Shown here: piece by piece, positions 25,782-43,034 of the stretch
Numbering within the stretch: the first letter of the stretch is position 1
Layout: each line of letters begins with the position of its first letter
IMG/VR virus record: IMGVR_UViG_3300029908_000004
Span: 124,001 to 188,000 of that record
Strand: one strand, 5' to 3'
Length of the DNA: 64,000 nt
Notes under the pieces: model-generated
The model's database searches: none
The model's input: only the letters and a program-made list of their open reading frames with translations
What the model was told of the DNA's origin: nothing
Translations under genes and position numbers: made by a program

Positions 25782-25833
25782 AAATTATACTTGACTTCGA
25801 TTCATTAGGGTCTATGAAATAAGGAATAAGGAT

Positions 25834-25855
25834 GGTGGGTGTCTCAACACCCACC
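25834..25855. repeat. 9-bp intergenic hairpin
   Basis: GGTGGGTGT-CTCA-ACACCCACC. Confidence 0.65.
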
Positions 25856-25867
25856 TAATTACATACA

Positions 25868-26389
25868 ATGATTATTTATCAAGCGACATGGCCTGACGGC
25901 TATACTGTCAAGTGGCGCAACCTAACTTGGGCAGAATATCGTAGAATAGAACCATCATACCTAGGAGCCTCTTCTAGGTTTTCTTATCCTATGGGGGCTT
26001 ATTTAGATGTATACAAACTAGTGATGCTAGATGGGCCACTCCCACAATTTGTGCCAGCGGGAATAGTAGCATACGTTGCTATACAACAGCTAAGTACTAA
26101 CCCATTCAATGGTACCTATGATGATATAAAAGGTCAATTATATTTATCTAGACAGAGATTAGAATCTAGTTATCTAGAAACAGCGAAGTGCTTGATAGCT
26201 GCAGCATTTAAATATAGATTCGAAGAAATGGAAGATTGGGATCCAATAACTTTCTTTGATATGTTAGCAAGAGCAGAGAAGGTATTGGGCCGGCTAGCAG
26301 AACCAAATAACCCTAATGAAGTTAAAGCCCCATCAATTCCAGAAGATGTTAAAAGAGAAGCATTACATAGAAATAGAAGGAAAAAGTAA
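25868..26389 (+). CDS. Putative tail assembly chaperone 2
   Basis: 173 aa; stop overlaps the ATG of the giant gene (TAATG). Confidence 0.5.
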   Translation: MIIYQATWPDGYTVKWRNLTWAEYRRIEPSYLGASSRFSYPMGAYLDVYKLVMLDGPLPQFVPAGIVAYVAIQQLSTNPFNGTYDDIKGQLYLSRQRLESSYLETAKCLIAAAFKYRFEEMEDWDPITFFDMLARAEKVLGRLAEPNNPNEVKAPSIPEDVKREALHRNRRKK

Positions 26390-29300
26390 TGGCAAAAGCA
26401 CGGAAGCCTAAGAAGAATATGTTTATCCTAGATATTGAAACCTCCCACACTAATTGGGAAGAGCTCAATCGTCTAGAAGGAAAGTTTTCTATCAGAGGGA
26501 TCTTCGAAGCTTCCAAAGAAGGTGCTTACGGCACTTCAGCTTTTTCTACTGCCTTTGTTAATAACCAAATCCTTCAGATGCATATTGAAGAATCTAAGGC
26601 ATATAGGAAATTTTCTGCTGATGGATCTAAGGTATATAAGAAAGGTTCTGGTTATACAAAACTATTCCTAGATAAGAATCATATCCTACCTTATAGAGAT
26701 ATCGTTAAGAATGTTGAATTTCCTATATTCTTAGACAAGTTTTCTAATGACATTGCAGCAGATGCTTTAAAGTACGCCACTCTTACAGAGGAGCAACAGC
26801 TAAGAAGACTCTTCCAAGCTGTGCAAGGAAAATCTATAAAAGCTGGTGGTCCTATTCAGCTTGCTGGATGGAATGTAAAATATGACATTGCTTCTCTTAA
26901 AGCCTCTGCAGCTAGATACTCCTCTCTAAATAAATATGTAGAATTCTTTGATAAAGCCTATGCTACTAATAAGATACAGTTTGTAAGCTTAGAAGACGAG
27001 TTGTTTAAACAAGTATGGACGCATGCTTCGCAGAATCCTGACTTAATGCGTCATCTTACAGATAAGGCTCGTGCCAGAACATTTGATCTTACATTAGAAC
27101 TTAAGAGTTCTGAAGATTTAAAGAACGTTCCGGGTTGGAAAGCTTCTAAGATAGCTAGAATGCTAGGTCTTGGAGAAGAACTTCATCGTGCAGCCGCAGA
27201 TGTAGCATTAGAGAGAATGATATACGAGGCTGTAATTACAAACGGTCTGACTCTAGAGCACATCAAAGCGATGTATGGTGCTTGGAGAACCGAAGCATCT
27301 TCTATAAAAGAAGTAACAGAAGTTATCGGTGACATAAGACCACTAAATGGGTTTGCTTTACTAGCAGGAGCCGCCGCTGCAATAGCAGCGGGCTTAGCAT
27401 TCAGTACCAGATCCTCTAGACAGACTACTATTGTTGGTTTATCAGATAATGGTAAAGCCAAGGATTCCAGACACAAACACACCTCGTTTGGTTCTGGATG
27501 GCACGGACTAGGAGAAGATAATAGTAGCTTAAATTATAAAGCTCTTGGCGCAGCTGGCTTTGCTGCAGCAGGGTATTCCTATTTCCGTAAGGTTATCGTT
27601 CCAGGAAAAGGACCTTTCTCTGTAGATAAACTACACAGCTTTGTAAGTACATTAGAAGATTACAGCCCATTTAAAATTGGTAGAACTTTTGGTATTAGTC
27701 AATACATAAGTTCTTATACTACTCCTAGTAAATTACACGTTGGTTATAGTGAATTAGTAGGACAGGGTGGTAAATATACTGAGTTAGGTGAACATTTTGA
27801 TCGCCTATTTACTGGTTCTAATGTAGATTTACGTTCCCAAAAAGGGTTGAATTTTATAAGGACTGATTATGGTCCTTATATGGAACTTGAGGGATACGGA
27901 GGAGACGTCCGTGCCCGTTTTACAAAGCGTGGAAGTCTATCTAGTTCTAGTTATAGATACAACAAACCTCTTGAAAATGTTCCTGTAACTTTCCTAAAAG
28001 AGAGTACTCCTTGGGAAACTATTACAAAGAACTTTGGTCGCCTTCGTCATTCACAAGAACCAACTGGTTATAAAGGTGCTATCAGTGTTGGCGAAGAAGT
28101 AGAAGGTGTCTTCCAACCATATCTAGTTAATATAAAGAGTAGAGGCAAATTATTTAATTTCGCCGAAACTGCTAATAGAACAGCTCTTAGTCAAGCCGAA
28201 CGTGTACAGAGATTATTATCTGATATAGGGTTAGGATTAAAAGAAGGTACGTGGAATAAAGCTTTTCACGTCCCTATAATAGGTGAGGGTGGTTTAGTTA
28301 ACCAGCTTCTTACTAAGAGATTCGCTCCAGCAGCTCTATTAGTTGGATTAGCCCTTCCTTACATAGATTATAAAACTGGCCATTCTTTAAGCGGTATAGC
28401 ATTAGATACGTTCCAGCGCTTTAGATTAGCCCATGCTTCCCTTACTGATCATTTTCTGCGTGGTGTAACAGATAAATATGAACAGATTGTACCCGGTCCA
28501 CAGTACGGTCCATTAGCCTTACCAGTATCTGGAGCCTTTGTTGGTGGGGTACTTCAATACTCTAATGTATTAAGAACTAGATACACAAAGGGAGAAAAAG
28601 CAGCAGAGTTACTTCGTTCAGGAAGTAAATTCTTCTCCGCCCCCGGACAAAAGTCAATCTTAGGTATCCTAAACCGTGAGAATAAGGGTGCTGTTGGTGT
28701 AGCTATTGGACTAGCGCTAATGCTTCCCTTCATTCCGGGGATGATTGGGTCTAGGAAAACAAAGGAAGAACTACAACGGACATACTCTGGTGAGGATCCA
28801 GTAGAAATAAAAGCTGGTCGCTGGTGGGATATGGGAACCACAGCGTTAGAAGGTGGTCGTGTAAAGGAGTATCGCCCACACTGGTCTGTTCTATGGCGCG
28901 CACAAGCAGAGAAGAAGGCTTTATATGGATCAGAGAAAGAGTACTGGAGACATAACCCGATACTTCATCCATTACGCTGGTTAAGAGATCCTTATTTCCT
29001 AGAAGAAAAGCATTATGAGGATAGGCCATACCCAGAGACTTCACCTGCGTTTACTAATGTTCCATTAGTAGGACCACTATTAGCTTCTACTATTGGTCAA
29101 ATTGTAAAACCAATCAGGAAGATGCATCCAGAGTGGGATACAACTGACTATACATTAGGGTCAACTCGTCTAGAACCGAGAGGTCCTAAAGCATTACCAG
29201 CAGCAGAACCAACATCAGAATTCTCTTTAGGTGACACAGCTCAAAGATCAATTAAAGCTGCTACTGAATTCGTTGGATTGCCGGGCTTTATCGGGCGTAG

Positions 29301-31365
29301 CTTATGGAATAAAACTTTCCCTGGATATGGATCTATGGGTGAGAATGTAAAGTTCCAAGGTTCCCGACAAATGACTAATTATAGTCGTAAATACTACGAG
29401 CTAGAACTAGGTGCTGTATCTGGTGTAAGTCCTGACTTTGAATTATTTGGATATTCTGAACCTTTCCGTCGTTTCGTACAGAACGAAGGAAAGTTACTTC
29501 AGGCTAATAGTATTAAGAATAAAATGCCTTCTTGGCTTCCTGGAGAGGATTATTTTATTAACTTCAGAACAGGTGACCCTTATGTAAAGATTTCAACTGG
29601 ATTCGCTCGTCTGCCGGGTGAGGGTTATGCAGCTCTACACCCAGAACTAGAAGGTGTCAGTCCAGAGGATTACCCAGATATGGAGAAATTACGTATCTTA
29701 GGGGATGTAGCACCATATTCTAGAGAGTTTGCTATCTTCAAAGGAAAGGTTAGGAAGGACATCAGAGGAGATACAGAAAGTTTAGCTGAGTATGAGAGTA
29801 TTATGGCTCGCGCTAATAAGATGCGCAAATCAGTTATTCGGACAGAGGAGCAGAGGTTCTCAAAGGATGTAGAAGAAACCACTGGAACAGTAAAAGCTCT
29901 AGGCTCAGCTGGTGTAGAGTTAAATGAATATCCGGGTCGTATATTTAGAATGAGCGGCGTTTCTACTACTGCTGCAGATATGTCTGCCGTTGTATTATCA
30001 CAATATAATGATATGACGAAGGAGGATGCTGCTAAGGAAATAGATGTAAGAAGAGCTGAGCTAGATAAATTCTTATCAGATACTTTCACTGCTGGCACAA
30101 AAGTAACGGCTACTTTCCAGAAAGGGGCTTTAGATAAAGAAACTAATATACGATCTGTATTAGAAATAGATGGATTAAACATCAATAAAGCTATAGTTGG
30201 TGAGGGTTACGGTACCTACGATAAAGCTTCTGCTGGGGCTGAATGGCAAGCTATGTTCAATCCAGCAGAAAGATTACTAGGAAGGTACGCAGAAGAAGCC
30301 TCATTCGCTGAAGAAGCACCTTGGTGGAACCCCCTTAGATGGTTACCTACACCTTATCATACCAAGCTGTGGCAAGAACGTTCAGCGCTAGCTCAGTACG
30401 TAGATCAAGAAACTGTCGGAACTCGTATGCGTAGGTGGGATAAGCCGATTAAAGACTTCTTGGCTCCGTATTACCATGGGCTATTACATAGGGTAAGCGG
30501 AGAAGTATTTATTCCAGAGGCAACAGTAGAAAAGCGGAATTTAAATACTATGGTAGATATGTTAGATTATCTACGAGATTTGAATTTAGCTTCTACCGAC
30601 TCTGAGAGTCGTGGCAGGTATACTAGTAAGGCTAGTAGGACAGCTATAGGTGCAAATCTTACTGGGTCCACCACTTTCCTAGGCTCCACACTGCCTGATC
30701 GTGATACTAGATACTTCAAAGAATTTGTAAATTCTACTGACGATGAGGAAAGACAGAAGATACTAGATGTGGTGCCAGATGAAATGGCTAGAGCTTTAGA
30801 AGCTCAGTGGGCTGGTAAAGAGGCACAGATAGCAGAGTCTGAAGGCAAGGAGACTAATATACAGTTCTCTGGTGGTCGCCTTGTGAATAAAGAAGGTCTT
30901 GATCGTTTCAAGAAAGCAACAACAAAGCTCGATTATGGTGATTATGAAAGGTCCTTAGAGATATCTGATTTCTTCGCGAAGACTGGATTATCAGTTCCTG
31001 AATCAGATTCAGCGTTATGGGACCCAAACATTGATTATGAAGACGTAAAGCTAAAGATTATAGAGATGGAAGGTCGTGATTACCATGACTTCAATATATT
31101 TGATGATAGAGCTTCATTACTTTGGCGTAAACCTTATGTAGATGGTGCAGTACAAGAGTTAACGTCTGGAAACGATCGTTCGGAAGAACAGATTAGAAGA
31201 CAAGTTGAGCGACTTATGCTAGCAGCTAAGAATCCTAATGCTAACCCTTTCACTAGTGGTCACCCATCTCAAGATAGTAGGGGTAGCGCTACCATTAATG
31301 TAAACGTGGATCAGACTGAAGAGTTGCTAAAAGATATGCGACGTAATCCGGAGAATTATGATTAG
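26389..31365 (+). CDS. Giant tape-measure-position protein with an N-terminal DEDDh 3'-5' exonuclease and a possible degenerate SNase-like domain
   Basis: ExoI ILDIET (D15, E17), ExoII AGWNVKYDI (D166) and ExoIII HRAAAD (H266, D271). Several G/A-rich hydrophobic segments follow. IFRMSGVST...LEIDGLNINKAIVGEGYG resembles a thermonuclease fold. It follows the tail chaperones. Confidence 0.7.
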   Translation: MAKARKPKKNMFILDIETSHTNWEELNRLEGKFSIRGIFEASKEGAYGTSAFSTAFVNNQILQMHIEESKAYRKFSADGSKVYKKGSGYTKLFLDKNHILPYRDIVKNVEFPIFLDKFSNDIAADALKYATLTEEQQLRRLFQAVQGKSIKAGGPIQLAGWNVKYDIASLKASAARYSSLNKYVEFFDKAYATNKIQFVSLEDELFKQVWTHASQNPDLMRHLTDKARARTFDLTLELKSSEDLKNVPGWKASKIARMLGLGEELHRAAADVALERMIYEAVITNGLTLEHIKAMYGAWRTEASSIKEVTEVIGDIRPLNGFALLAGAAAAIAAGLAFSTRSSRQTTIVGLSDNGKAKDSRHKHTSFGSGWHGLGEDNSSLNYKALGAAGFAAAGYSYFRKVIVPGKGPFSVDKLHSFVSTLEDYSPFKIGRTFGISQYISSYTTPSKLHVGYSELVGQGGKYTELGEHFDRLFTGSNVDLRSQKGLNFIRTDYGPYMELEGYGGDVRARFTKRGSLSSSSYRYNKPLENVPVTFLKESTPWETITKNFGRLRHSQEPTGYKGAISVGEEVEGVFQPYLVNIKSRGKLFNFAETANRTALSQAERVQRLLSDIGLGLKEGTWNKAFHVPIIGEGGLVNQLLTKRFAPAALLVGLALPYIDYKTGHSLSGIALDTFQRFRLAHASLTDHFLRGVTDKYEQIVPGPQYGPLALPVSGAFVGGVLQYSNVLRTRYTKGEKAAELLRSGSKFFSAPGQKSILGILNRENKGAVGVAIGLALMLPFIPGMIGSRKTKEELQRTYSGEDPVEIKAGRWWDMGTTALEGGRVKEYRPHWSVLWRAQAEKKALYGSEKEYWRHNPILHPLRWLRDPYFLEEKHYEDRPYPETSPAFTNVPLVGPLLASTIGQIVKPIRKMHPEWDTTDYTLGSTRLEPRGPKALPAAEPTSEFSLGDTAQRSIKAATEFVGLPGFIGRSLWNKTFPGYGSMGENVKFQGSRQMTNYSRKYYELELGAVSGVSPDFELFGYSEPFRRFVQNEGKLLQANSIKNKMPSWLPGEDYFINFRTGDPYVKISTGFARLPGEGYAALHPELEGVSPEDYPDMEKLRILGDVAPYSREFAIFKGKVRKDIRGDTESLAEYESIMARANKMRKSVIRTEEQRFSKDVEETTGTVKALGSAGVELNEYPGRIFRMSGVSTTAADMSAVVLSQYNDMTKEDAAKEIDVRRAELDKFLSDTFTAGTKVTATFQKGALDKETNIRSVLEIDGLNINKAIVGEGYGTYDKASAGAEWQAMFNPAERLLGRYAEEASFAEEAPWWNPLRWLPTPYHTKLWQERSALAQYVDQETVGTRMRRWDKPIKDFLAPYYHGLLHRVSGEVFIPEATVEKRNLNTMVDMLDYLRDLNLASTDSESRGRYTSKASRTAIGANLTGSTTFLGSTLPDRDTRYFKEFVNSTDDEERQKILDVVPDEMARALEAQWAGKEAQIAESEGKETNIQFSGGRLVNKEGLDRFKKATTKLDYGDYERSLEISDFFAKTGLSVPESDSALWDPNIDYEDVKLKIIEMEGRDYHDFNIFDDRASLLWRKPYVDGAVQELTSGNDRSEEQIRRQVERLMLAAKNPNANPFTSGHPSQDSRGSATINVNVDQTEELLKDMRRNPENYD

Positions 31366-31379
31366 TCCCGGGAGGGTAA

Positions 31380-32444: not shown

Positions 32445-32846
32445 ATGGAAGAACAAATAATATCAGTTACCTCCACTGACAATGCTATAACTCATCTAAA
32501 ACGATTTCGCAAGAATTGGGATGGCCATAATTGCCCAGCCATCAAAATTAAGGCGATGAAAACGTTAGAAGTTATATTGAGAGATATAGAGGATAGTAAG
32601 TTAACATTTCCTAAAATACTCCCTCTACACGACGGGGGAGTTGGTTTAATGTGGGCTTCTCACACCAGAGATGTCGGATTAGAAATAGCCCCTAATGGTG
32701 CACTATCATTTGAGTTTAGCCTTAAAAAATATGACGTAACCGGTGAGTTATCTGGTGAAGAAACCTCAGTAGGAACTCTTTCTTGTACAGCAAGCGTGGA
32801 TTATGTCCTAGCTTGGTATTCTAGTGATAAAGCGGGTTCTGTTTAA
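32445..32846 (+). CDS. Hypothetical protein
   Basis: 133 aa abutting the ATPase stop codon; NWDGH...P...DGGVGLMW pattern; no function assigned. Confidence 0.6.
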   Translation: MEEQIISVTSTDNAITHLKRFRKNWDGHNCPAIKIKAMKTLEVILRDIEDSKLTFPKILPLHDGGVGLMWASHTRDVGLEIAPNGALSFEFSLKKYDVTGELSGEETSVGTLSCTASVDYVLAWYSSDKAGSV

Positions 32847-32852
32847 TTTCAT

Positions 32853-32898
32853 GGTGGCTTGAATCCTGTAATTACAGGCCCAGCCAAATTAAGCCACC
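32853..32898. repeat. Nested inverted repeats upstream of the RNAP-like gene
   Basis: Outer arms GGTGGCTTGA (32853-62) and TTAAGCCACC (32889-98) enclose the perfect palindrome CCTGTAATTACAGG (32865-78). Confidence 0.7.
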
Positions 32899-32913
32899 TA
32901 ATTTTGGATCGTA

Positions 32914-35900: not shown

Positions 35901-37839
35901 AAACTTTAGAGTAAAATACCTAGACAAAGAGGGTAAACCACAGTTCATACCTGTCCCGGGGACTGATGCTTATATGTCTATAAGCCCAGAATATAATAAA
36001 GAGAAAGGCGTAGGTTACCAAACTCATGACTGGCAAAATCAATTACATAATATTTATAACGAGGAAAAAGCTGGTAATATCGAAGCTAGAGACGCGTTAA
36101 TAGAGGGTATTAAACGAAAAGGCGGTTCAACCCAAGGAATAATAGATGCTATTCACGATGACCTATTAACAGGGAAGAATAGTGCTTGGAGACCACGTAG
36201 CTATGATCCATTAGGTAGATCTGGATACATCACGACCCGTGGAGGAACCGCTGAACCTTTCATAGTAGGTATCTCCTCAGAAGAATTAAAAGCGCTACCC
36301 GCCAGTATACAACAAGGTATAGAAAAGCAAGGATTTGGCACTGCTTTACTCGGACGCCAGCCTTATGGAGATGCGGTTGCAGTTAAAGTAATAGAAGATA
36401 AACATTTAAAAGGAACCAAGTTCTTTAGTATCAATGAAATAGTTCGTATGTTAATAGGTGCTGATGATGACCTTGATCCAGCCAACCTACATTATTATGC
36501 TGCTGGTTCAACAGGTGAAGCAGAAGCTCTAAGGGTAATGGCACCCGGTGGTAGACAAGCTAGAAGAGTAGAAAACTTCCGTGCGTTAATGGGCTCAGCT
36601 GACGAAAGTGCCTCAGTAAGAAATCCGGTACAAAAAGACTTAGCTGAGAGACTAGCTAAGAAACTTGCGCTAATGTCTAATCTAGAAGCCGCTGTAGCTA
36701 ATAGGTCTGCAGCAGAGGCTACTGGTACGTTATCCCTTGCTTCTGGTAGAATGTTAGCTCACATAGAGAGATCTCCAGCATTTAAGAATAATGAGGTAGT
36801 GCGTGATTATTTAACAGATATAGCAAAAAGATTACGTCAAGCGCCTATTGATGCTCGTAAGACTCAGACTTTGTTCAATAAACAAATGGCTATGAATATA
36901 GCAAATGAAGTTAAGGAATCATTTAAACTTGGCACGAGTGGCGCTGAAGGTAGTATAAAACAAGGTGCTGAAATGTTAAGGCGGGCTGTATTAAAGGAAG
37001 GTATTCTAGTTCCAGTTGATTGGAATCCTGTAATGGGAAAGAGATTTAATATTCCACAACCCCTTCCTGAAGAAATAGCAAAAGGTGGTGGTAAAGTTAA
37101 TGCAGCTGCTAGATGGTTAGAAACGCCCGAAGGAATAACAGCCAGTGAAGACTTAATGAAAGGTGCCACTAGAGAAACTGAGAATTGGGTAGATATAACA
37201 AGTGGTGTTCTTACTGGTGGAAAGAAAGTTACTAGAGAGATATACAATAAGTTAGAAGCTAGTGTTCCACCAACATTCCGTAAAGCATTTATGGCTATGA
37301 GTAGCGCAGCCGATTTAGGAACTATCAATACAAAAGCTGCGGCTGGTGCTTCTATGAGATCTATCGCTTCAACTGTTACCGAACTCTTCCGTGGAGATTC
37401 AGGTAAAGTTCTTGGTGTAGGTTTAGCTATTGCTGCTGGGGCTGGTTTACTATTTAATAGACCTAGGAATCCAAAGCAATTAGCAACAGCTAAGATGTCT
37501 AGACCAAGTGGGCATAGACCGGAAGAACGTATAGGAACTGACGGAGCAATACCCGGAGAGCCAATTACGGGGTCTATGGCACCAACTAATCCTCCTAAAT
37601 CAGTTAGATATGTAGAAAAAGGAGTGAGAACTACAATGGTGGCTCCAATGAATAGAACCTCAAACGTAGAAGCTACGATTGTAACTGACAGTGCTAGACA
37701 AGGTGCTGACTATTCTAGAGCTGCTGCTATGATGTCTAGTAATGGTGATGTAAACGCCACGATTAATTATAAAGTAAATAATAAGTTAGGAAGTCTCAGA
37801 AATAGAGAACGCATCAGAGAGATAAGAGACGAACAATAA
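32914..37839 (+). CDS. Putative single-chain two-barrel (DPBB) DNA-dependent RNA polymerase in the tail module, likely virion-associated
   Basis: beta-like motifs: GETDIIISDAL (E615) and KHDTFGVKG (K700, K707). beta'-like motifs: LLTGKNSAWR..LGRSGYIT..IVGIS, LLGRQP, IGADDDLD (D1184, D1186, D1188), EAEALRVM and QAPIDARK. Hydrophobic segments occur at both termini. Confidence 0.78.
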   Translation: MTIISSTVLSVANLIKRHHGVLAASAIVPFFYDSEDRGYFRTAMITTPILFAGAEMLPKLFSTAKTEAESVFHATMSTAKNPIFNTAHNIVGSDLSKLAEDGTVGIRTVEEAQARYSMGLAKARPIEDINNLYSRATGLLKATDQNRRMMSQAVVSSAQDAMTPYDWISTPKVLEGLLDKDNRTNVSMSDDKMLEIAEFFKGRGDTRFPRRLQSNMDRIEGLVDQGAFVPAGATFFPPDVVTNLQVGSWSEAIEEKLSNAGAGGVSNILKNRSNLDKLNLQVKLVSQGVIDGSTADASYIDFVRTMKDVEQSIRIPIPDANGAVRIGPYIGTARSVMDYDGKIYRIDEWVAKMVTEGNDYTEKQLMGDINRAVFFTAHDPADTEAIYSQAGSRFGKNFAGENQVRLKSQAAVLTSLPRFKMGDEAVSFEKLDPLFQSDFERKLINSGTVSMMGPESAWGNRVYQLRKMEDFAMGGVADVTKQDWNYRSLSKGVSYEFVQNKNGLDLKPKVSTTAYEEFLGTKEVPEFNMRLAGISPQEKTLLGDFGMYKTWEEAQAYKPLFIERAMEMNISPAKAEKAFNDIEHFYRSKTKLDKFGKPKLGYGATIFEQIGSLGETDIIISDALAKTGRLKYTTTYEVDQMHFNPEDWVGKDVEDDFKFGTRQNKVVSPDSGGKILSTKAADESTYHIIMEHYQGMDAAKHDTFGVKGEFHTGTYQGNFQTMLSAINDFRKTTRTGDVIDKYTVNGIADWTYAQNKMDPMLLRMSIAEDTLHNISSRNKAVGEELISSATEQLAKVGVDYTDGQMIFQHEFIRKQFASREAKIANMEELNSVIDKIMADATASIRSKKGLGYKVYQGWYNKTGSGITDDVQAGKSLEAYMLRNGVNVNVRTWAHANINLPEHATVTHDYDTFSNLGDKRVMAAELRNRLQTVGEGDPEMSMLYGQYLQDNDYTKPMRESEDVVVDLDKAFLGSAKLSRPEGRHGTIFDPSDSRYKENFRVKYLDKEGKPQFIPVPGTDAYMSISPEYNKEKGVGYQTHDWQNQLHNIYNEEKAGNIEARDALIEGIKRKGGSTQGIIDAIHDDLLTGKNSAWRPRSYDPLGRSGYITTRGGTAEPFIVGISSEELKALPASIQQGIEKQGFGTALLGRQPYGDAVAVKVIEDKHLKGTKFFSINEIVRMLIGADDDLDPANLHYYAAGSTGEAEALRVMAPGGRQARRVENFRALMGSADESASVRNPVQKDLAERLAKKLALMSNLEAAVANRSAAEATGTLSLASGRMLAHIERSPAFKNNEVVRDYLTDIAKRLRQAPIDARKTQTLFNKQMAMNIANEVKESFKLGTSGAEGSIKQGAEMLRRAVLKEGILVPVDWNPVMGKRFNIPQPLPEEIAKGGGKVNAAARWLETPEGITASEDLMKGATRETENWVDITSGVLTGGKKVTREIYNKLEASVPPTFRKAFMAMSSAADLGTINTKAAAGASMRSIASTVTELFRGDSGKVLGVGLAIAAGAGLLFNRPRNPKQLATAKMSRPSGHRPEERIGTDGAIPGEPITGSMAPTNPPKSVRYVEKGVRTTMVAPMNRTSNVEATIVTDSARQGADYSRAAAMMSSNGDVNATINYKVNNKLGSLRNRERIREIRDEQ

Positions 37840-40800
37840 TGAGTATAACAATTAGTAACCCACAACTAGACGATCCAGAAAGTGGTTATTTTCGTATTGG
37901 AAATGTGATATTAAAGATTCCACCAGAGGATATTAATATCCATAAGACCTCTAATGTAGACGAACTTACTGCTTTAAGAGCTAAGTTCCCATACATAAAC
38001 GAAAGTGGATTCGCTCGTTGGGATGTGACGGTATCTTGGACAGCAGTATATGAGGAAAACCCTCAGAATTATTCTGATTCCCCAAGTTTCTCAGAGAATG
38101 ATGACCCACATTGGGCTCAATGGGAGGATGTACGCACCATTGTAGCTATGATGAAAGCTGCTCCATTTGTAGAAGTGGAGAATGATCTTGTACGTTCAGT
38201 TATTTCATCGAGGAATGACGAATCTTCATATTCAGGAATAGCTGTTACTGATAGTACTAAATATGTTCGTTTAGCTTTTGCTCTCCGTCAATTTAAGGTA
38301 TCAACTTCAGAGGATATAGTAGATGGATTAAAGTGTCAACTAGTTATGACATTATTTAATTATCTTCCATTTACCAAAGACTTCGCTTATGTAGGCACTG
38401 GTGGTTTGCCGGTAGACGCCACTCAATCAGATGCTTTTAAGAAGTATTTGAATGAATGGAAAGAAAATAATTTAGATGCTCCACAAGAAGGGGAATACAG
38501 CCCATGGCAGGAGCAAGACCCGGAAGATACGAGTTTTATTTGGCGGACTTATATGCCACAACCAGGGCTCCCTGTTGCTGCTCCAAGCGATTTAGATGTT
38601 GATGAATGGAAGTGTGACCATTTCACAGATGATATGACTTATAGATATAAGGAGAATAGATTACATCTAGATTCTTCAGATGGCTCAAGCTCTGAGGAAG
38701 GCTTATTTCCTACCAATCTCTCCGTTGTATTTGTAAATCAGTTTGCTCAATTACCATTAGCTAATTATCAATATCCTACATATCAACATATAGGCCCAGC
38801 AACTACCGTTATCTCTATGGGTATGGAATCTGATAGCGCTGAATCCCTAGGGGTAACTGGTTTAACTGGAATGATAAATGAGTTGAAGAAACAATTCTTA
38901 CAATTCCGTTCTTGGAAATCTGCTGCTAGTATTTATAATAGGCAGGCTATCCTAGTTCGTAATCAGTTCCTTAATATGCTAGGAGTATGGGGGCTTAACG
39001 TAGCAGAATTTGATGTATCTACTATACAGAATTCTGCTGGTAGATTATCTTGTACCCTCATGGCTAGACAATATGAAAACTACTATGAGTTATTAGATCC
39101 ATTTACTGTATATGGTAGTGACCATTATACACAACAATTGAGTAGTTATATTAGGTCCCCAGCCTTAACTGCTGGGCTAACTCAAGCTGAGCAATCAGGA
39201 ATGCAAAAGCTTGTAGCTTTTCGTAACGCTTGGAATGGCTACGACGATAAATATTTAGCGAATCTTTTATTATCTACAGACCCAACAACAGCGTCTACTT
39301 TAAAGACATTGCCTAGTATACCAATGCCTAGTGGGGTATCGTTGACCCCTACTGAGCAGGCTAATCTATTCTTAACACTTAAGGAAGAAAGCCCATTAAG
39401 TGCTACTGTAAGTAGGCTGCCCGGAACGGCTGGTTATGGTAGTACACCCTTCGATAGCAGTTATTGGCCTTGGTTAGCCGCTAAGAACAGCCCTGGATAC
39501 GTAATGTCTTATACAGACTATTGGGTGTTAACACGACTAAATACTTTGTCTAGTCAGAATGATCCAACTAGGTATCAAGCAGATTTAGCTATCCAACAGA
39601 AATATGACCCACAAGTAACCCAAGCCATGAAAGATCAGATATGGCAGAAGGCATTTGAACTATTGGCAGCAAATGACCGAGTAATGTCGAATAACTTGGA
39701 TCAAATAGCTCGTTCGAAATCTTTCAAAGACTCTCTTGATTCATCGACACAAGCACAAGGTTTATATAGTCCCGGGTCTGACCCATCTAATGGTAAACAT
39801 GGATGTTATAGGGACTTAGGGATTTATGATGGGGACCCGGCTGAATATTTCATTGATTATTCCAATGTGCTATTAACAACAGCTGCCCAGCAAATGGAAC
39901 AGAATTTATCTGTAATGTTAACTGGATTCAAAGCTTTTAATACAAAAAATCAGCAGGGTCAGGGAACAACAATACCAACTGATCTTTCAGATTTTGGTAT
40001 ACAAGAAGGTAATGTTTCTGGTATGCTCCTACGTTCTAATATACCAAAATATAGTATGAGGGGATGTTTCCCAACATTCAAATTATTTCTTATGGAGGAT
40101 AAGAACACTAGTATTTTCTATTGTTATGATAATTTCTATTCTTATGCCTCTGTAATTGATATGGAAATGATTAAGTATAGGGACAAGCCTGATACTGCTG
40201 TGATAAGAATTACAAACCTATCTGGTATGTTGTCATATAGATTATTCGATAACTCTGTACAAGGTAAGAGAGAATGGGAATTAAGCAATGATGTTAAGGT
40301 CCCTACTTCCCTTGACGGGTCACCAACGGTTAACCCAGGAGGTATGCCGGGTGCTGTAATGGCTGGTAGAATGGGCAATCATAACTATCAAGAGGGTCAA
40401 GGTAGTTTAAACTCCCCCGGAGAAACGTTCGTTACAAACCAACCTAAGGTGCCATTGCGGTATTACCCATTACAAACTGGATCAAAGATACAAGTACGTC
40501 TTGGTTATTCTAATAATCCAGACGGGTTATACCCAGTATTTGTTGGACAAGTCACACAAATAGATGAAGAAGACGGGATTATAACTCTTGTAGCTCAAAG
40601 CTATTTGACTGAGTTGGATACCTCTATGTCAGACGAAGTTAGCAGCGATGGTTTTTCTGTGCCCGGTCTTGTTGGTAACATAATTAATAGTGTTACTGAC
40701 GCTGCTATACGGCTAGTTAAATTCCAGCCAATGATGGCATTTCGTGATTTATGGGCGGGATTAACTTACGTTAGAGCTCCAGCTTACGGCGGATGGCTGA

Positions 40801-43034
40801 ATTTATCTGGGGATGGTGACGCTTCCAATGTAATAAAAGCGATTCTTAAGATAAGTCAGGCAAGACATTTTGGAAAATGGCAGATTGGTGGTTTACCTGA
40901 TCGTTATGTAAAAGGGTTTACATGGAGTGACACGCTTGCTGCCTTAGGAGGCACTGGACCAATTGCTTCGACACTTAATAATAGTTATGATAGGTCTGGA
41001 GCTAACATATTAGTTAATCATTTGGTTAATTATAGTGGAACAGAAGTTGTTGGTAAGTTCCCAGTTACTAGAAGTTGGACATTCGAACAGCCCGGTTGTA
41101 CAAAGCCTGTTTATCATATTAAAGGGGGAACAGCACGCACACCTTGGTTCTATATCAAAGATGTAGGACGTAGGTACCCAGATTACGTTCTAGCAGTTAG
41201 ACAATATGGGTTCCCATATCAGGCAAATGCTACTTGTATATTTGGACATCCTAATGATTTCTATTATTCTAGAGATTTAATCTTAGGGGAACTTACTGCA
41301 ATGAAGCTACAGCCTGCTGTAGCTAAACCTATCTTTGCAGATTGGTGGGATCACCAACAAGGTAGGTCTCAAACAGCAGCCATGCTATATAACTATCTCA
41401 TACCAGTGTTACCCGGCGTGCAGCCTGGGGACACTTATGTAAACACATTTATGAACAAGATAGATAGTACAAAAGACCCTAATGTTTATTTCCAACAATT
41501 AGACTCTCTAAATACTATGATAAACAGAACTGGAAACGATTTATTATCATGGTGGCCAGGGGTACAAAACTATCAGATGCAGTCTTTTAGAACAGAGGTG
41601 AATTATCTTCGTAACTCACTTGAATATTATTTAACTCTAAAGATAAACGGGACTATCGGTAAAGTTAATGAGGCGTTACGTATTCAACCAGTTCGTAGAT
41701 GGAATTACATAGACCACGAATCCATAATCCACAACGGTATAAAATTATCTGATAAATTCTTCAATACAATAAAGTTATCTGATGACACTCTATGTATAAA
41801 TGAGATGATACCAAGTCATCACCAACGGGTATTAGACGCTGACGAGCTTGTGGAGTCTGTGGATAAGAATTTAAAAAGTGGTGGTAATGAGCCAATGCGT
41901 CTAGCAACTATCCAGAGCTTCTTAAGAGAAGAATGTGGAAAGATGTATTATGGTGAATTAATTATTAAAGGCACACCAGAAATTGAGCCTTGGGATGTTG
42001 TAGTTATAACAGACCCAGCAACTGGTATGATGGGTCCCGTAGAAGTAGACTCCGTAATTCACACATTCAATCAGGAAATGGGGTTTATTACTATTATTAA
42101 GCCTAGAGCGTTGATAATAGTTAATGATGCTGCTTCCATGGGGTTATTGAATGGATATCGTTGGGCTTGGGCTAACGCGACCCAGATAATAAATGGGTAT
42201 AGTCAAGCTTATGGAGACGCTACAACGGCCATTGGTGTAACTACACCAACATTACTGGGAGTAGTAGCTGGTGGAACGGCAGCAGCCATCTTTGGCGGTC
42301 CTATAGGGGATGTTGTAGCAGTAATGGTTGCTGGTAGGGCATTTGCTACAGCTATAAATATCTCTACAAGAATGAATCTATGTATGGTGTTTCCACTTAT
42401 GAGATTTGGTAACCCTTGGGTGGGTGGTTTACAAGGATATCGAGCAGGTGATATAGTATATTGGTTAAAGGATCATTGGATACAATTTTATACTGATGAA
42501 ATAGCTCCATTAATGAGCACTTGGCAGGAAATAAAACAAAGCATAACACCATCTTTGCAGGACCCAACTATGACACCAAATCCTGTTCCCCCTATTTCAC
42601 CTAGACCACGATCTAAAATATCTAGTGATAAACAAGCAATCATAGCATTAATTCGTAAAGTAGCTGCTAGACCCGAAAACCAAGCGATGCCTGTAGACTT
42701 AGCCATAGCTCAGGCACAGCAAGAATCTACTCTTAACCCAAATGCTATAGGTCCAATGACTAAATGGGGGAAAGCTATAGGGTTATTTCAATTACTACCA
42801 AGTACAGCTGCTGGTTTACATGTAGACCCTTATGTTCCTGAACAGAATATACAGGGTGGTATAACGTATATGTTGCAATTATATGATAAGTTTCATACTT
42901 GGCCATTAGCACTAGCCGCTTACAATATGGGGCCGGGAGCTCTCCAGCACCATCTAGATAAGGGCACGCAATGGCCAACACAGACACAAACTTACGTATC
43001 TAATATTATGGGGCATTGGAATCAGAACTCATAA
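37839..43034 (+). CDS. Baseplate hub/tail-tip protein with a C-terminal lytic transglycosylase (SLT)
   Basis: Hub-type KIQVRLGYSNNPDGLYPVFVGQVTQI...ITLVAQS and GELIIKGTPEIEPWD. SLT motifs are QQESTLNPNA (E1629), AIGLFQLLPST, NIQGGITYM and ALAAYNMGPG. Confidence 0.82.
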   Translation: MSITISNPQLDDPESGYFRIGNVILKIPPEDINIHKTSNVDELTALRAKFPYINESGFARWDVTVSWTAVYEENPQNYSDSPSFSENDDPHWAQWEDVRTIVAMMKAAPFVEVENDLVRSVISSRNDESSYSGIAVTDSTKYVRLAFALRQFKVSTSEDIVDGLKCQLVMTLFNYLPFTKDFAYVGTGGLPVDATQSDAFKKYLNEWKENNLDAPQEGEYSPWQEQDPEDTSFIWRTYMPQPGLPVAAPSDLDVDEWKCDHFTDDMTYRYKENRLHLDSSDGSSSEEGLFPTNLSVVFVNQFAQLPLANYQYPTYQHIGPATTVISMGMESDSAESLGVTGLTGMINELKKQFLQFRSWKSAASIYNRQAILVRNQFLNMLGVWGLNVAEFDVSTIQNSAGRLSCTLMARQYENYYELLDPFTVYGSDHYTQQLSSYIRSPALTAGLTQAEQSGMQKLVAFRNAWNGYDDKYLANLLLSTDPTTASTLKTLPSIPMPSGVSLTPTEQANLFLTLKEESPLSATVSRLPGTAGYGSTPFDSSYWPWLAAKNSPGYVMSYTDYWVLTRLNTLSSQNDPTRYQADLAIQQKYDPQVTQAMKDQIWQKAFELLAANDRVMSNNLDQIARSKSFKDSLDSSTQAQGLYSPGSDPSNGKHGCYRDLGIYDGDPAEYFIDYSNVLLTTAAQQMEQNLSVMLTGFKAFNTKNQQGQGTTIPTDLSDFGIQEGNVSGMLLRSNIPKYSMRGCFPTFKLFLMEDKNTSIFYCYDNFYSYASVIDMEMIKYRDKPDTAVIRITNLSGMLSYRLFDNSVQGKREWELSNDVKVPTSLDGSPTVNPGGMPGAVMAGRMGNHNYQEGQGSLNSPGETFVTNQPKVPLRYYPLQTGSKIQVRLGYSNNPDGLYPVFVGQVTQIDEEDGIITLVAQSYLTELDTSMSDEVSSDGFSVPGLVGNIINSVTDAAIRLVKFQPMMAFRDLWAGLTYVRAPAYGGWLNLSGDGDASNVIKAILKISQARHFGKWQIGGLPDRYVKGFTWSDTLAALGGTGPIASTLNNSYDRSGANILVNHLVNYSGTEVVGKFPVTRSWTFEQPGCTKPVYHIKGGTARTPWFYIKDVGRRYPDYVLAVRQYGFPYQANATCIFGHPNDFYYSRDLILGELTAMKLQPAVAKPIFADWWDHQQGRSQTAAMLYNYLIPVLPGVQPGDTYVNTFMNKIDSTKDPNVYFQQLDSLNTMINRTGNDLLSWWPGVQNYQMQSFRTEVNYLRNSLEYYLTLKINGTIGKVNEALRIQPVRRWNYIDHESIIHNGIKLSDKFFNTIKLSDDTLCINEMIPSHHQRVLDADELVESVDKNLKSGGNEPMRLATIQSFLREECGKMYYGELIIKGTPEIEPWDVVVITDPATGMMGPVEVDSVIHTFNQEMGFITIIKPRALIIVNDAASMGLLNGYRWAWANATQIINGYSQAYGDATTAIGVTTPTLLGVVAGGTAAAIFGGPIGDVVAVMVAGRAFATAINISTRMNLCMVFPLMRFGNPWVGGLQGYRAGDIVYWLKDHWIQFYTDEIAPLMSTWQEIKQSITPSLQDPTMTPNPVPPISPRPRSKISSDKQAIIALIRKVAARPENQAMPVDLAIAQAQQESTLNPNAIGPMTKWGKAIGLFQLLPSTAAGLHVDPYVPEQNIQGGITYMLQLYDKFHTWPLALAAYNMGPGALQHHLDKGTQWPTQTQTYVSNIMGHWNQNS

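What the first reader, a model, noticed from the sequence alone, without database searches (positions are those of the whole stretch)
26389..43034. Possible injected-enzyme module: exonuclease-TMP, Clp ATPase, RNAP and SLT hub in one run
Seen: four consecutive large genes, each with a recognisable enzyme domain, occupy the slot where a myovirus usually has one tape measure gene and a hub gene. Both ~1650-aa giants carry membrane-like hydrophobic hairpins and are similar in length. Inference: a two-part tape-measure/ejectosome system that opens the wall (SLT), spans the membrane, and delivers a nuclease and a polymerase, with an unfoldase for loading or refolding. I do not recall this combination being described.
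Basis: inference. Interest (0 to 1): 0.8.

Follow-up and report, generated by a model that had tools for sequence, protein, structure and literature searches.

The report
RNA-polymerase-like giant in tape-measure slot
In a peat-soil jumbo phage with a contractile tail, the giant gene where the tail "tape measure" normally sits has an RNA-polymerase-like core, next to a giant carrying an exonuclease and a wall-cutting tail hub, so the phage may inject its own transcription enzyme through the tail.

Summary
All four enzyme calls hold. g1 (26389-31365) has an N-terminal DEDDh exonuclease. g2 (31380-32444) is a single-ring ClpA/ClpB-D2 AAA+ ATPase. g4 (32914-37839) has an 860-aa globular core with an invariant DxDxD and the fold of the RNA polymerase beta' active site. 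g5 (37839-43034) is a 0305phi8-36 gp147-type hub ending in an SLT domain. A fifth small gene (g3, 32445-32846) was overlooked.

The phage belongs to the Bacillus phage 0305phi8-36 / Acinetobacter phage ME3 jumbo myovirus lineage. The trio g1-g4-g5 sits between the tail-chaperone slot and the baseplate in every relative examined. Two parts vary between relatives:
- The ATPase: present in 2 of 4 relatives; in one the slot also holds two tRNA genes.
- The exonuclease head on g1.

ME3 gp036 carries the same motif and fold in the same slot; WH1 gp095 carries the motif, and probably the fold. Both are unannotated as polymerases.

The closest precedent is the tape-measure-fused virion RNA polymerase of Thermus siphophage P23-45, but the two share no detectable sequence similarity.

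The injected-enzyme reading is plausible for g1, g4 and g5. A required unfoldase is not supported. Virion location and enzyme activity are untested. I rate this a new variant of a known kind, interest 0.65.

The parts
25293..26389 (+). Two small genes (162 and 173 aa) in the position of the split tail-assembly chaperone pair (0305phi8-36 gp143/144, ME3 gp033/034)
   Evidence: Position and size only. There is no detectable pairwise similarity to the ME3 proteins and no PHROG or NCBIfam hit.
26389..31365 (+). g1: 1658-aa giant of the 0305phi8-36 gp145 / ME3 gp035 / WH1 gp096 virion-protein family
   Evidence: tblastn to 0305phi8-36 ORF145 and ME3 gp035. 88 homologues, most about 1300 aa and lacking the N-terminal head.
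26389..27288 (+). g1 N-terminal DEDDh (RNase T/DnaQ-like) 3'-5' exonuclease domain, aa 1-~300
   Evidence: Motifs D15-x-E17, N162...D166 and H266...D271 are conserved in 13 homologues. The profile hits RNase T 2f96 at E=6e-4.
27349..27405 (+). g1 TM-like segment 1 (aa 321-339), followed by the highly conserved RQT..GL...FGSGW block
   Evidence: Hydropathy 1.88. Invariant columns R341-G373.
28690..28746 (+). g1 TM-like segment 2 (aa 768-786)
   Evidence: Hydropathy 2.15.
28726..31362 (+). g1 conserved C-terminal folded domain (aa 780-1658). It is mostly alpha-helical and contains an SNase-like OB barrel at about aa 1161-1270 (nt 29869-30198).
   Evidence: AF2 pLDDT 82.4, pTM 0.80. SNase hits by HMM (E=0.012) and by Foldseek (prob 0.99, E~0.1). 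No invariant residue lies in the SNase-like part.
31380..32444 (+). g2: stand-alone ClpA/ClpB D2-type AAA+ ATPase (354 aa) with Walker A/B motifs, a GYVG pore loop and a P-M-G-F loop
   Evidence: Pfam AAA_2 plus ClpB_D2-small. It matches ClpB residues 557-852 only. The motifs are conserved in the L006 homologue.
32445..32846 (+). g3: 133-aa protein of unknown function, conserved immediately upstream of g4 in some relatives
   Evidence: Homologous to the 141-aa gene in L005 and present in the contig carrying P0002. It matches the C-terminus of the PADLOC candidate PDC-M32A at E=1e-9. No Pfam, PHROG or NCBIfam hit.
32914..37839 (+). g4: 1641-aa giant in the tape-measure slot
   Evidence: Position between g1 and the hub gene in the window and in relatives. 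The family has 104 cluster representatives.
34591..37173 (+). g4 globular core (aa 560-1420) with the two-barrel RNA polymerase beta'-like active-site fold
   Evidence: AF2 pLDDT 90.7, pTM 0.88. Foldseek PDB gives 74 hits at E<=1e-3; all 50 listed are RNA polymerase largest subunits. BFVD top hits include ME3 gp036 and, probably, WH1 gp095, followed by giant-virus and poxvirus RNA polymerase subunits.
36355..36477 (+). g4 catalytic signature R1148-Q-P ... A-D1184-D-D1186-L-D1188, corresponding to beta' NRAPTLH...NADFDGD
   Evidence: Invariant or 97% conserved in 61 sequences. The HMM aligns this stretch to Pol I Rpa1 591-668 and to archaeal Rpo1N. Sequence read directly.
37399..37455 (+). g4 C-terminal TM-like segment (aa 1496-1514)
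   Evidence: Hydropathy 1.65. Conserved in all 7 homologues.
37456..37836 (+). g4 strongly conserved C-terminal tail (RPEER..G.PGE..G.MAP.NPPR ... LxSLRxRxxIRE), directly upstream of the hub gene
   Evidence: Invariant columns 1535-1635. A profile of this tail finds only g4-family members.
37839..43034 (+). g5: 1731-aa baseplate hub homologue (0305phi8-36 gp147 / ME3 gp037 family) with a hydrophobic region at aa 1467-1510 and a C-terminal SLT domain
   Evidence: phrog_20474 at 6.8e-38. Collinear BLASTP blocks to gp147 and ME3 gp037. gp147 was assigned as T4 gp27/P2 gpD-like in PMC2147016.
42678..42956 (+). g5 SLT lytic transglycosylase domain (aa 1614-1706), E-S motif present
   Evidence: Pfam PF01464 at 5.4e-17. 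PDB 8rhe at 3.7e-5. Sequence read.

Best explanation
This is the tail-interior (ejection) module of a 0305phi8-36/ME3-like jumbo myovirus from peat. Its conserved core is three giants encoded between the tail-chaperone slot and the baseplate.

1. g1 is a gp145-family virion protein. It has two TM-like segments and a large folded C-terminal domain, and here it carries an optional N-terminal DEDDh exonuclease.
2. g4 is the protein in the tape-measure slot. Its 860-aa core is a two-barrel-type RNA polymerase with a beta'-like DPBB and an invariant DxDxD. The core is followed by a TM anchor and a conserved C-terminal tail next to the hub gene.
3. g5 is the gp27/gpD-type hub, with a hydrophobic region and an SLT domain.

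Proposed mechanism (inferred):
- On sheath contraction, the hub's SLT cuts the peptidoglycan.
- g1 and g4 leave through the tube and anchor in the cytoplasmic membrane by their TM segments.
- The g4 polymerase transcribes the first DNA to enter (pre-early genes), as shown for the tape-measure-fused virion polymerase of P23-45.
- The g1 exonuclease acts on host or incoming nucleic acid.

g2 (ClpA/B-D2 ATPase) and g3 are accessory cargo in a variable slot between g1 and g4, not obligatory parts.

Shown computationally: the domain identities, the conservation of catalytic residues, the synteny, and the variability of the ATPase and nuclease. Inferred: virion or tail-lumen location of g1 and g4 in this phage, ejection, polymerase and nuclease activity, and template specificity.
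For: - Domain calls.
- Collinear beta'-type motifs in g4: GKxxxxR (K1088/R1093), GRS..IT, R1148-x-P1150 and D1184xDxD, then a long helix carrying the conserved R1264/G1271/S1274.
- Synteny g1-g4-g5 in four metagenomic relatives and in 0305phi8-36, ME3 and WH1.
- ME3 gp036 and WH1 gp095, which sit in the same slot, carry R.P...D.D.D motifs. ME3 gp036 is among the best BFVD structural matches; the top match is probably WH1 gp095, identified by length only.
- gp145 and gp146 of 0305phi8-36 are virion proteins by mass spectrometry (record notes).
- WH1 gp095 and gp146 share a C-terminal TM-plus-tail region.
- All three giants have TM-like segments.
- Precedent of a tape-measure-fused virion RNA polymerase: PMC10770324.
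- The phage is real and recurrent, held by 20 or more peat/permafrost runs.
Against: - There is no direct evidence that g1 or g4 is in the virion of this phage.
- 0305phi8-36 gp146, the only mass-spectrometry-verified slot-mate, has no DxDxD and no detectable similarity to g4.
- The link from g4 to ME3 gp036 and WH1 gp095 rests on fold, motif and position only. HMMs do not connect them.
- A folded 860-aa domain would not fit a tail-tube lumen, which is about 4 nm wide (general knowledge of tail-tube dimensions), so the storage state is unexplained.
- The second, beta-type barrel is not demonstrated. The only hint is a weak RPO132 hit at E=0.02.
- Sequence-level similarity to known RNA polymerases is confined to the DxDxD neighbourhood (E~0.1).
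- There is no similarity to P23-45 gp96.
Confidence: 0.55

Rival explanations
1. g4 is a genuine phage RNA polymerase, but it is not delivered with the virion. It would be a non-virion, single-subunit transcriptase that merely happens to be encoded inside the tail gene block.
For: There is no virion evidence for the g4 family. The core is a compact globular enzyme that is hard to place in a tail tube. 0305phi8-36-type phages also encode a separate YonO-like polymerase (PMC7824862), and ME3 has a second fold match of 798 aa.
Against: The position between g1 and the hub is kept across relatives about 25% identical and across ME3 and WH1. g4 has a C-terminal TM segment and a conserved tail abutting the hub gene, the same layout as the C-terminus shared by WH1 gp095 and the mass-spectrometry-verified gp146. 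The whole block reads as one late structural unit on one strand with overlapping stops and starts.
Confidence: 0.15
2. g4 is a structural tape measure or ejection protein whose polymerase-like core is an exapted, catalytically dead scaffold.
For: It occupies the tape-measure slot. 0305phi8-36 gp146 in the same slot has no DxDxD, which shows that the slot protein can exist without the motif. No activity data exist.
Against: The three Asp residues and P1150 are invariant, and R1148, K1088 and R1093 are 92-98% conserved, in 61 sequences with only about 21% mean column identity. That pattern indicates purifying selection on an active site.
Confidence: 0.1
3. The four genes form one functional unit in which the Clp-type unfoldase is needed to load or refold the two giants, and the two giants together act as a two-part tape measure.
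For: The ATPase gene sits exactly between the giants here, in the closest relative and in one distant relative. It has an intact pore loop and Walker motifs. Folded enzyme domains would need unfolding to pass through a tube. The g1-type and g4-type proteins lengthen together in the long-tailed Bacillus phages (1930/2537 and 2025/2515 aa, against 1263/1603 in ME3).
Against: The ATPase is absent from L005, from the contig carrying P0005, and from 0305phi8-36, ME3 and WH1, all of which keep both giants. The same junction carries tRNA genes in L006. A conserved [M/L]-G-F loop suggests that the ATPase docks on ClpP as a protease partner rather than acting as an assembly chaperone. No ClpP was found in the window.
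Confidence: 0.15
4. The g4 two-barrel enzyme is not a DNA-dependent transcriptase. It would instead be a primase-like or RNA-dependent polymerase (QDE-1/RdRP-like).
For: The Atlas feature search gave a weak lead to PF05183 RdRP clusters from viruses. Two-barrel enzymes include RdRPs and PolD (PMC7824862). Template specificity cannot be read from the sequence.
Against: The best structural matches are DNA-dependent RNA polymerase beta' subunits. All characterised phage virion two-barrel enzymes are DNA-dependent transcriptases (PMC10770324, PMC5467207).
Confidence: 0.05

Closest known systems
Thermus phage P23-45 gp96, a tape-measure-fused virion RNA polymerase (Chaban et al. 2024, PMC10770324)
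   Same: A two-barrel-type polymerase with a DxDxD motif lies inside the giant protein encoded in the tape-measure slot. The same polypeptide carries a TM segment. Sequence similarity to cellular RNA polymerases is limited to the DxDxD neighbourhood. The role proposed here is the one demonstrated there: transcription of the first-entering DNA.
   Different: - No detectable sequence similarity (hhalign).
- The host phage is a contractile-tailed jumbo myovirus, not a siphovirus.
- The polymerase core lies in the middle to C-terminal part of a 1641-aa protein, rather than at the N-terminus of a 5002-aa protein with a long ruler.
- There is no metallopeptidase domain.
- g4 is accompanied by a second giant (g1) and a separate giant hub.
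- Activity and virion location are untested here.
Bacillus phage 0305phi8-36 gp145-gp146-gp147 module (Hardies et al. 2007, PMC2147016), with Acinetobacter phage ME3 gp035-037 and Bacillus phage WH1 gp096-094
   Same: The gene order is the same: sheath, tube paralogues, chaperone slot, giant 1, giant 2, giant hub with lytic domains, then gpV/gpJ-like baseplate genes. g1 is homologous to gp145, ME3 gp035 and WH1 gp096. g5 is homologous to gp147 and ME3 gp037. ME3 gp036 and WH1 gp095 carry the R.P...DxDxD motif, and ME3 gp036 (probably also WH1 gp095) matches the fold of the g4 core.
   Different: - 0305phi8-36 gp146 was called a tape measure on length alone. It has no DxDxD and no similarity to g4.
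- None of these phages has the ATPase, g3 or the exonuclease head.
- No record annotates the slot protein as a polymerase.
YonO (SPbeta) and crAss-like phage virion RNA polymerase (phi14:2 gp66): single-chain two-barrel RNA polymerases of phages
   Same: A single polypeptide carries a beta'-type DxDxD barrel. These enzymes are extremely divergent from cellular RNA polymerases. The crAss-like enzyme is a giant virion-packaged protein.
   Different: hhalign aligns only the DxDxD pentapeptide region with YonO (E=0.11). Neither appeared among the listed Foldseek matches (50 rows listed per library). YonO is not virion-associated. The crAss-like phages are podoviruses.
RNase T / oligoribonuclease (DEDDh exonucleases)
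   Same: The three Exo motifs, including the H-x4-D of the DEDDh subclass, are present and collinear. The profile hit to RNase T has E=6e-4.
   Different: The domain is fused to the N-terminus of a 1300-aa membrane-associated phage structural protein. It has large insertions between ExoI and ExoII, and it falls below Pfam detection.
ClpA/ClpB/ClpV D2 AAA+ ring
   Same: AAA_2 plus the D2-small domain, Walker A/B motifs, the GYVG pore loop, and sensor and arginine residues.
   Different: It consists of the D2 module only (354 aa), with no N-domain, D1 ring or M-domain. It has a ClpA/ClpX-like [M/L]-G-F loop that ClpB lacks (the ClpP-loop comparison rests on my own knowledge of Clp ATPases).

Membership tests
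Two-barrel (DPBB) RNA polymerase superfamily | A beta'-type barrel carrying an invariant DxDxD metal-binding loop, preceded by an R-x-P strand | tested here: met
   D1184/D1186/D1188 and P1150 are invariant and R1148 is 97% conserved in 61 sequences. The HMM aligns this stretch to Rpa1 and Rpo1N NRQPTLH...NADFDGD.
Two-barrel (DPBB) RNA polymerase superfamily | Three-dimensional similarity of the active-site region to the largest subunit of RNA polymerases | tested here: met
   The AF2 model has pLDDT 90.7. Foldseek PDB gives 74 hits at E<=1e-3; all 50 listed are beta'/Rpb1/C160/AR9 beta'-type chains, with 260-340 aligned columns at rmsd 6-8 Å in the local hits. Viral RNA polymerase subunits are hit in BFVD.
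Two-barrel (DPBB) RNA polymerase superfamily | A second (beta-type) barrel supplying conserved basic residues at the barrel interface | tested here: inconclusive
   Only a weak BFVD hit to poxvirus RPO132 (E=0.02, prob 0.95). There is no sequence signal against E. coli beta. A candidate region lies at 975-1020, where R982, G984, P1013 and G1016 are conserved.
Two-barrel (DPBB) RNA polymerase superfamily | Template-dependent RNA synthesis | not testable with these tools
   Needs a biochemical assay.
P23-45 gp96-type tape-measure-fused virion RNA polymerase | Sequence homology to gp96 residues 1-1200 | tested here: not met
   hhalign of A3 against gp96(1-1200): probability 0.3, with no meaningful alignment.
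P23-45 gp96-type tape-measure-fused virion RNA polymerase | Polymerase domain and TM segment in the protein encoded in the tape-measure slot | tested here: met
   Gene position. TM segment at 1496-1514.
P23-45 gp96-type tape-measure-fused virion RNA polymerase | Presence in virions and transcription of pre-early genes | not testable with these tools
   The only indirect evidence is that 0305phi8-36 gp146, in the same slot, is a virion protein by mass spectrometry. It lacks the motif.
Tail tape measure protein | Gene located between the tail assembly chaperones and the baseplate hub | tested here: met
   True for both g1 and g4. The chaperone identity is positional only.
Tail tape measure protein | A largely extended alpha-helical or coiled-coil ruler along most of its length | tested here: not met
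   g4 560-1420 and g1 780-1658 are predicted as compact mixed alpha/beta and alpha domains (pTM 0.88 and 0.80). g4 1-559, g4 1421-1641 and g1 300-780 were not modelled.
Tail tape measure protein | Protein length proportional to tail length | not testable with these tools
   No micrographs exist for this uncultured phage.
DEDDh 3'-5' exonuclease (RNase T/DnaQ-like) | ExoI (D-x-E), ExoII (N/D...D) and ExoIII (H-x4-D) motifs in order | tested here: met
   D15 and D166 are invariant. E17, H266 and D271 are at least 90% conserved in 13 sequences. All are present in g1 itself.
DEDDh 3'-5' exonuclease (RNase T/DnaQ-like) | Significant profile similarity to family members | tested here: met
   Profile A4 against the PDB: RNase T 2f96 at E=6e-4, plus 2is3, 3nh0 and an oligoribonuclease. 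Single-sequence Pfam shows no hit.
Clp/Hsp100 AAA+ ATPase | AAA_2 module plus D2-small domain, with Walker A/B motifs and an aromatic pore loop | tested here: met
Clp/Hsp100 AAA+ ATPase | Full ClpA/ClpB architecture (N-domain, D1 and D2) | tested here: not met
   The protein is 354 aa and aligns only to ClpB 557-852 and ClpA 450-733. Its bit scores are far below the equivalog cut-offs.
Clp/Hsp100 AAA+ ATPase | ClpP-docking [LIV]-G-[FL] loop | tested here: inconclusive
   PMGF in g2 and SLGF in the L006 homologue lie at the equivalent place after the MTSN sensor. The assignment rests on my recollection of the ClpA/ClpX loops. No ClpP gene is present in the window.
SLT lytic transglycosylase | Pfam SLT above the gathering score, with the catalytic Glu-Ser | tested here: met
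   61.9 bits against a cut-off of 21.3. QQESTLNP read.
Myovirus baseplate hub (T4 gp27 / P2 gpD type, via 0305phi8-36 gp147) | Homology to gp147 and ME3 gp037 | tested here: met
   phrog_20474 at 6.8e-38. Collinear BLASTP blocks with E values from 4e-12 to 1e-7.
Myovirus baseplate hub (T4 gp27 / P2 gpD type, via 0305phi8-36 gp147) | gp27-like fold domains 1 and 3 | not tested
   This relies on the HHsearch assignment of gp147 in PMC2147016.
Staphylococcal nuclease (SNase) fold in the g1 core | OB-fold similarity to SNase | tested here: met
   HMM E=0.012. Foldseek TM normalised by target 0.5-0.6, prob 0.99, E~0.1. Atlas top cluster carries PF00565.
Staphylococcal nuclease (SNase) fold in the g1 core | Conserved catalytic Arg, Glu and Ca-binding Asp residues | tested here: not met
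   No invariant or near-invariant column lies in A5 positions 380-500. The domain is therefore probably a binding or structural OB domain.

The most novel reading that the evidence does not exclude
A large, previously unrecognised family of single-chain two-barrel RNA polymerases is built into the tape-measure-slot protein of contractile-tailed jumbo phages. It includes at least 100 clusters at 50% identity, and the cultured phages ME3 and WH1 show the same fold or motif in the same slot. If so, tail-delivered transcription arose, or has persisted, well beyond the single Thermus siphovirus example. In this reading the polymerase travels with a partner giant that carries interchangeable nuclease heads: a DEDDh exonuclease here and a Vsr/REase-type domain in relatives. 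Together they would form a modular enzyme-injection apparatus.
Probability: 0.4. Interest if true: 0.8.

Novelty: new variant of a known kind. Interest (0 to 1): 0.65.

Why it matters
How jumbo phages outside the phiKZ group start transcription is largely unknown, and so is what fills the tails of phages whose tape-measure genes cannot be recognised.

If the slot protein is an injected polymerase, the P23-45 finding becomes a general strategy shared by sipho- and myoviruses. It would also give a function to the 1600-2500-aa "hypothetical" or "virion structural" proteins of ME3 and WH1. The 0305phi8-36 "tape measure" assignment, made on length alone, would need re-examination.

The finding offers cultured test systems in ME3/Acinetobacter and WH1/Bacillus. 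It also adds a very divergent branch to the two-barrel polymerase superfamily.

The variable nuclease heads and the Clp-type ATPase suggest that this locus is a platform for delivering or servicing enzymes at the moment of entry. That bears on phage-host conflict and on phage engineering in laboratory strains.

Tried and rejected
- Megablast of the region and tblastn of g4 against 50,697 GenBank phages found nothing. g4 has no close cultured relative at sequence level.
- Pfam, PHROGs and PDB sequence searches of g1 and g4 as single sequences found nothing useful. The 7-sequence profile of g4 against the PDB gave only noise.
- hhalign of the g4 profile against 0305phi8-36 gp146, ME3 gp036, YonO, E. 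coli beta', E. coli beta and P23-45 gp96 gave either nothing or only the DxDxD pentapeptide at E~0.1. Sequence methods cannot place the family; the fold had to do it.
- A pairwise Smith-Waterman alignment of g4 1075-1200 against beta' 325-475 scored only about 3 SD above shuffles. For the putative beta-like region against beta the figure was 0.4 SD.
- I considered that g1 might supply the missing beta-type barrel as a second polymerase subunit. This was rejected: its modelled C-terminal domain matches only an SNase-like OB fold.
- I considered the SNase-like domain as a third active nuclease. This was rejected because it has no conserved catalytic columns.
- I looked for a second polymerase paralogue in the 64-kb window and in the fetched loci and found none. 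The short polymerase-like hits P0186 and P0195 lie on contigs too small to interpret.
- I looked for a ClpP partner in the window and found none.
- P0171 and P0179 from the profile search are repeat-protein false positives, PKD and Calx-beta respectively.
- The chaperone pair could not be confirmed by similarity.
- Read laying was not used. RNA runs hold at most 8% of the sampled words and would not have settled any of the open questions.

Full report
**What is there**

The finding spans five tightly packed genes on the + strand:
- g1, 26389-31365, 1658 aa
- g2, 31380-32444, 354 aa
- g3, 32445-32846, 133 aa
- g4, 32914-37839, 1641 aa
- g5, 37839-43034, 1731 aa

A tail sheath gene (19456-21525) and two tube paralogues lie upstream. 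A Baseplate_J/wedge-like gene (44561-45766) lies downstream. Portal, major capsid and FN3-fibre genes lie further upstream.

The same sequence is on two IMG/VR contigs of 143 and 215 kb. It is held by 20 or more peat and permafrost metagenome runs. This is therefore a real, recurrent, uncultured jumbo myovirus. No GenBank phage matches at nucleotide level.

**Lineage and synteny**

tblastn of g1 hits Bacillus phage 0305phi8-36 ORF145 (a virion protein by mass spectrometry), Acinetobacter phage ME3 gp035, Bacillus phages WH1, Edson and KLEB27-3, and Moorella phage MTATph1.

In 0305phi8-36 the gene order is sheath, tube, tube paralogue, gp142, chaperonins gp143/144, gp145 (1930 aa), gp146 ("hypothetical tape measure", 2537 aa), gp147 (hub with lytic domains, 1903 aa), then gpV- and gpJ-like baseplate genes. 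ME3 (gp035/036/037) and WH1 (gp096/095/094) have the same layout.

g5 shares collinear blocks with gp147 and ME3 gp037 and matches the corresponding PHROG (6.8e-38). Hardies et al. assigned gp147 as a T4 gp27/P2 gpD-type hub. [quoted passage not shown]

Among four metagenomic relatives of g4 (25-48% identity), the trio g1-g4-g5 followed by baseplate genes is always present. The g1-g4 junction varies:

| Relative | Content of the g1-g4 junction |
|---|---|
| Contig carrying P0002 (closest) | ATPase plus a 133-aa gene |
| L006 | ATPase plus tRNA-Asn and tRNA-Thr |
| L005 | a 141-aa g3 homologue only |
| Contig carrying P0005 | nothing |

**g4 is polymerase-like**

Single-sequence searches find nothing. 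Seven homologues showed an invariant D1184-x-D1186-x-D1188. A profile search of 1.84 billion representatives gave 104 family members.

In a 61-sequence alignment of the core (about 21% mean column identity), the invariant columns are G1016, P1150 and the three aspartates. K1088, R1093, R1148, R1264, G1271, S1274, Q1309, I1312 and K1316 are at least 90% conserved.

The local sequence reads LLGRQPYGDAVAVKVIE...GADDDLDPANLH. It parallels beta' LLNRAPTLHRLGIQAFE...NADFDGDQMAVH. Upstream, GKNSAWRPRSYDPLGRSGYITT parallels beta' [25 protein letters not shown] (the correspondence is my reading by eye).

The profile aligns exactly this stretch to Pol I Rpa1 and archaeal Rpo1N, though only at E=0.09-1.7.

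AlphaFold2 with the 61-sequence alignment gave a compact model for residues 560-1420 (pLDDT 90.7, pTM 0.88).
- Foldseek against the PDB returned 74 hits at E<=1e-3. All 50 listed are largest subunits of multisubunit RNA polymerases: bacterial beta', Pol II and Pol III, cyanobacterial gamma and phage AR9. The local hits align 260-340 columns.
- Against BFVD, the best match is a 1258-residue half-protein that is very probably WH1 gp095. I infer that identity from length only.
- The next matches are the second half of ME3 gp036 (E=3e-7), a siphovirus "minor tail protein", a Microcystis phage MaMV-DC protein and a second ME3 protein of 798 aa.
- After those come giant-virus, poxvirus and baculovirus RNA polymerase subunits, including a weak hit to the beta-like RPO132.

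ME3 gp036 has SREP...GGDHDQD at residue 1217 of 1603. WH1 gp095 has NRYP...KADHDGD at residue 1996 of 2515. 0305phi8-36 gp146 has no DxDxD and shares only its C-terminal ~150 residues (a TM segment plus tail) with WH1 gp095.

g4 ends in the same way, with a Gly/Ala-rich TM-like segment (1496-1514) and a very conserved 125-residue tail.

What is not established:
- The second (beta-type) barrel.
- Any sequence relationship to YonO or P23-45 gp96 beyond the pentapeptide.
- Enzymatic activity.
- Virion location.

**g1**

Residues 1-~300 carry the DEDDh motifs D15-I-E17-T, W-N162-V-K-Y-D166 and H266-R-A-A-A-D271. These are conserved in the 13 homologues that have this head. The profile hits RNase T (E=6e-4) and an oligoribonuclease, with the motifs in register.

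Most of the 88 homologues are about 1300 aa and lack the head. The closest relative (76% identity) lacks it too. Instead it has a Vsr/REase_MTES_1575 domain inserted at a loop equivalent to g1 residue ~932. Other homologues carry inteins.

After the head, g1 contains:
- a TM-like segment (321-339);
- an almost invariant RQT..GL...FGSGW block;
- a second TM-like segment (768-786);
- a conserved C-terminal domain.

The C-terminal domain folds confidently (pLDDT 82) into helices plus an SNase-like OB barrel. The barrel has no conserved catalytic columns, so I regard it as a binding or structural domain. The most conserved part of g1 (about residues 800-1110) matches nothing known.

**g2 and g3**

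g2 is a stand-alone D2 module of ClpA/ClpB/ClpV. It has Walker A (GPTGVGKT), the pore loop (GSPPGYVG), Walker B (DELEKA) and sensor residues.

g2 and the L006 homologue share an [M/L]-G-F loop at the place where ClpA and ClpX carry their ClpP-docking tripeptide (this comparison comes from my knowledge of Clp ATPases). g2 may therefore feed a ClpP protease. No ClpP gene is in the window.

g3 has no family annotation. [quoted passage not shown]

**Interpretation**

The conserved unit is g1-g4-g5. The ATPase, g3, the tRNAs and the nuclease domains are variable additions.

I commit to g4 being the tape-measure-slot protein of this lineage, with an active two-barrel polymerase core that is delivered through the tail and anchored by its C-terminal TM segment. 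I take g1 to be a co-ejected membrane-associated partner whose head here is an exonuclease, and g5 to be the wall-cutting hub. My confidence is about 0.55.

The direct precedent is P23-45 gp96, a 5002-aa tape measure whose N-terminal ~1200 residues are a two-barrel virion polymerase that transcribes pre-early genes. Its authors likewise found it through a DFDGD motif with no other sequence similarity. They also noted that how the enzyme is packaged is unknown (PMC10770324).

The main weaknesses are:
- no virion data for the g4 family;
- the unexplained storage of a folded 860-aa domain;
- 0305phi8-36 gp146 lacking the motif.

Rival explanations, each with its refuting experiment, are listed separately.

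**Novelty**

Within the searchable literature I found no description of a polymerase in the tape-measure slot of ME3, WH1 or 0305phi8-36-like myoviruses.
- The P23-45 paper's survey of viruses with two or more RNA polymerase polypeptides does not list ME3, WH1 or 0305phi8-36.
- Iyer et al. 2021 report only a separate YonO-like enzyme in 0305phi8-36, ABS83659.1. That is not gp146, which is ABS83704.1.

The concept is therefore known from one siphovirus. This family, its occurrence in contractile-tailed jumbo phages, and its pairing with a nuclease-headed giant appear to be new. I classify it as a new variant of a known kind.

Noticed in passing
L006:9624-9841 (relative of the window; equivalent to window ~32445-32913): In one relative, the slot between the Clp-type ATPase and the g4 homologue holds tRNA-Asn(GTT) and tRNA-Thr(TGT) instead of the g3 gene. 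The g1-g4 junction therefore looks like a hotspot for accessory insertions.
   Followed up: partly
homologues of window 26389-31365 (P0009 aa 662-775; P0090 aa 547-899; P0093 aa 992-1305): g1-family genes repeatedly carry in-frame mobile-looking insertions: Vsr/REase_MTES_1575 (DUF559) endonuclease domains and LAGLIDADG inteins. These may be selfish elements rather than payload.
   Followed up: partly
window 32445-32846: The small protein g3 resembles the C-terminal ~90 residues of the PADLOC candidate defence protein PDC-M32A (E=1e-9). By Atlas features it belongs to a widespread unannotated family of bacterial and phage small proteins. Its function is unknown.
   Followed up: partly
window 22097-22807 and 22871-23920: Two paralogous genes hit phrog_9206, which is labelled 'major head protein'. 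They correspond by position to 0305phi8-36 gp140/gp141, which that record's own notes call tail tube and tube paralogue. The PHROG and GenBank product label is misleading.
   Followed up: partly
window 11799-16490: A fourth giant (1563 aa) is strongly acidic (49 K+R against 101 D+E) and has three FN3 domains. It has no PHROG hit and is probably a fibre or decoration protein.
   Followed up: no
window 7777-8289: A VanY/Peptidase_M15 (endolysin-type) gene of 170 aa lies inside the head-to-neck structural block, and a Big_5 Ig-like protein lies at 7032-7787.
   Followed up: no
L004 (Acinetobacter phage ME3, elsewhere in the genome; UniProt A0A172Q0S6, 798 aa): A second ME3 protein matches the g4 polymerase-core model (Foldseek E=2.5e-5). 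It could be a non-virion paralogue, echoing the two-polymerase arrangement of P23-45. Its gene was not located.
   Followed up: no
window 62001-64000: GC content rises to 0.51 in the last 2 kb, against about 0.40 elsewhere. No ORF of at least 100 aa is listed after 61067; ORFs running off the end of the window are not listed.
   Followed up: no
BFVD hits A0A8S5SD80_1 (Siphoviridae sp. ctnpt50 'minor tail protein') and A0A075BUT7_2 (Microcystis phage MaMV-DC): Tail-annotated or uncharacterised giants of unrelated phages also match the g4 polymerase-core model (TM normalised by query 0.34-0.41). Polymerase-like cores in tail giants may therefore be more widespread.
   Followed up: no
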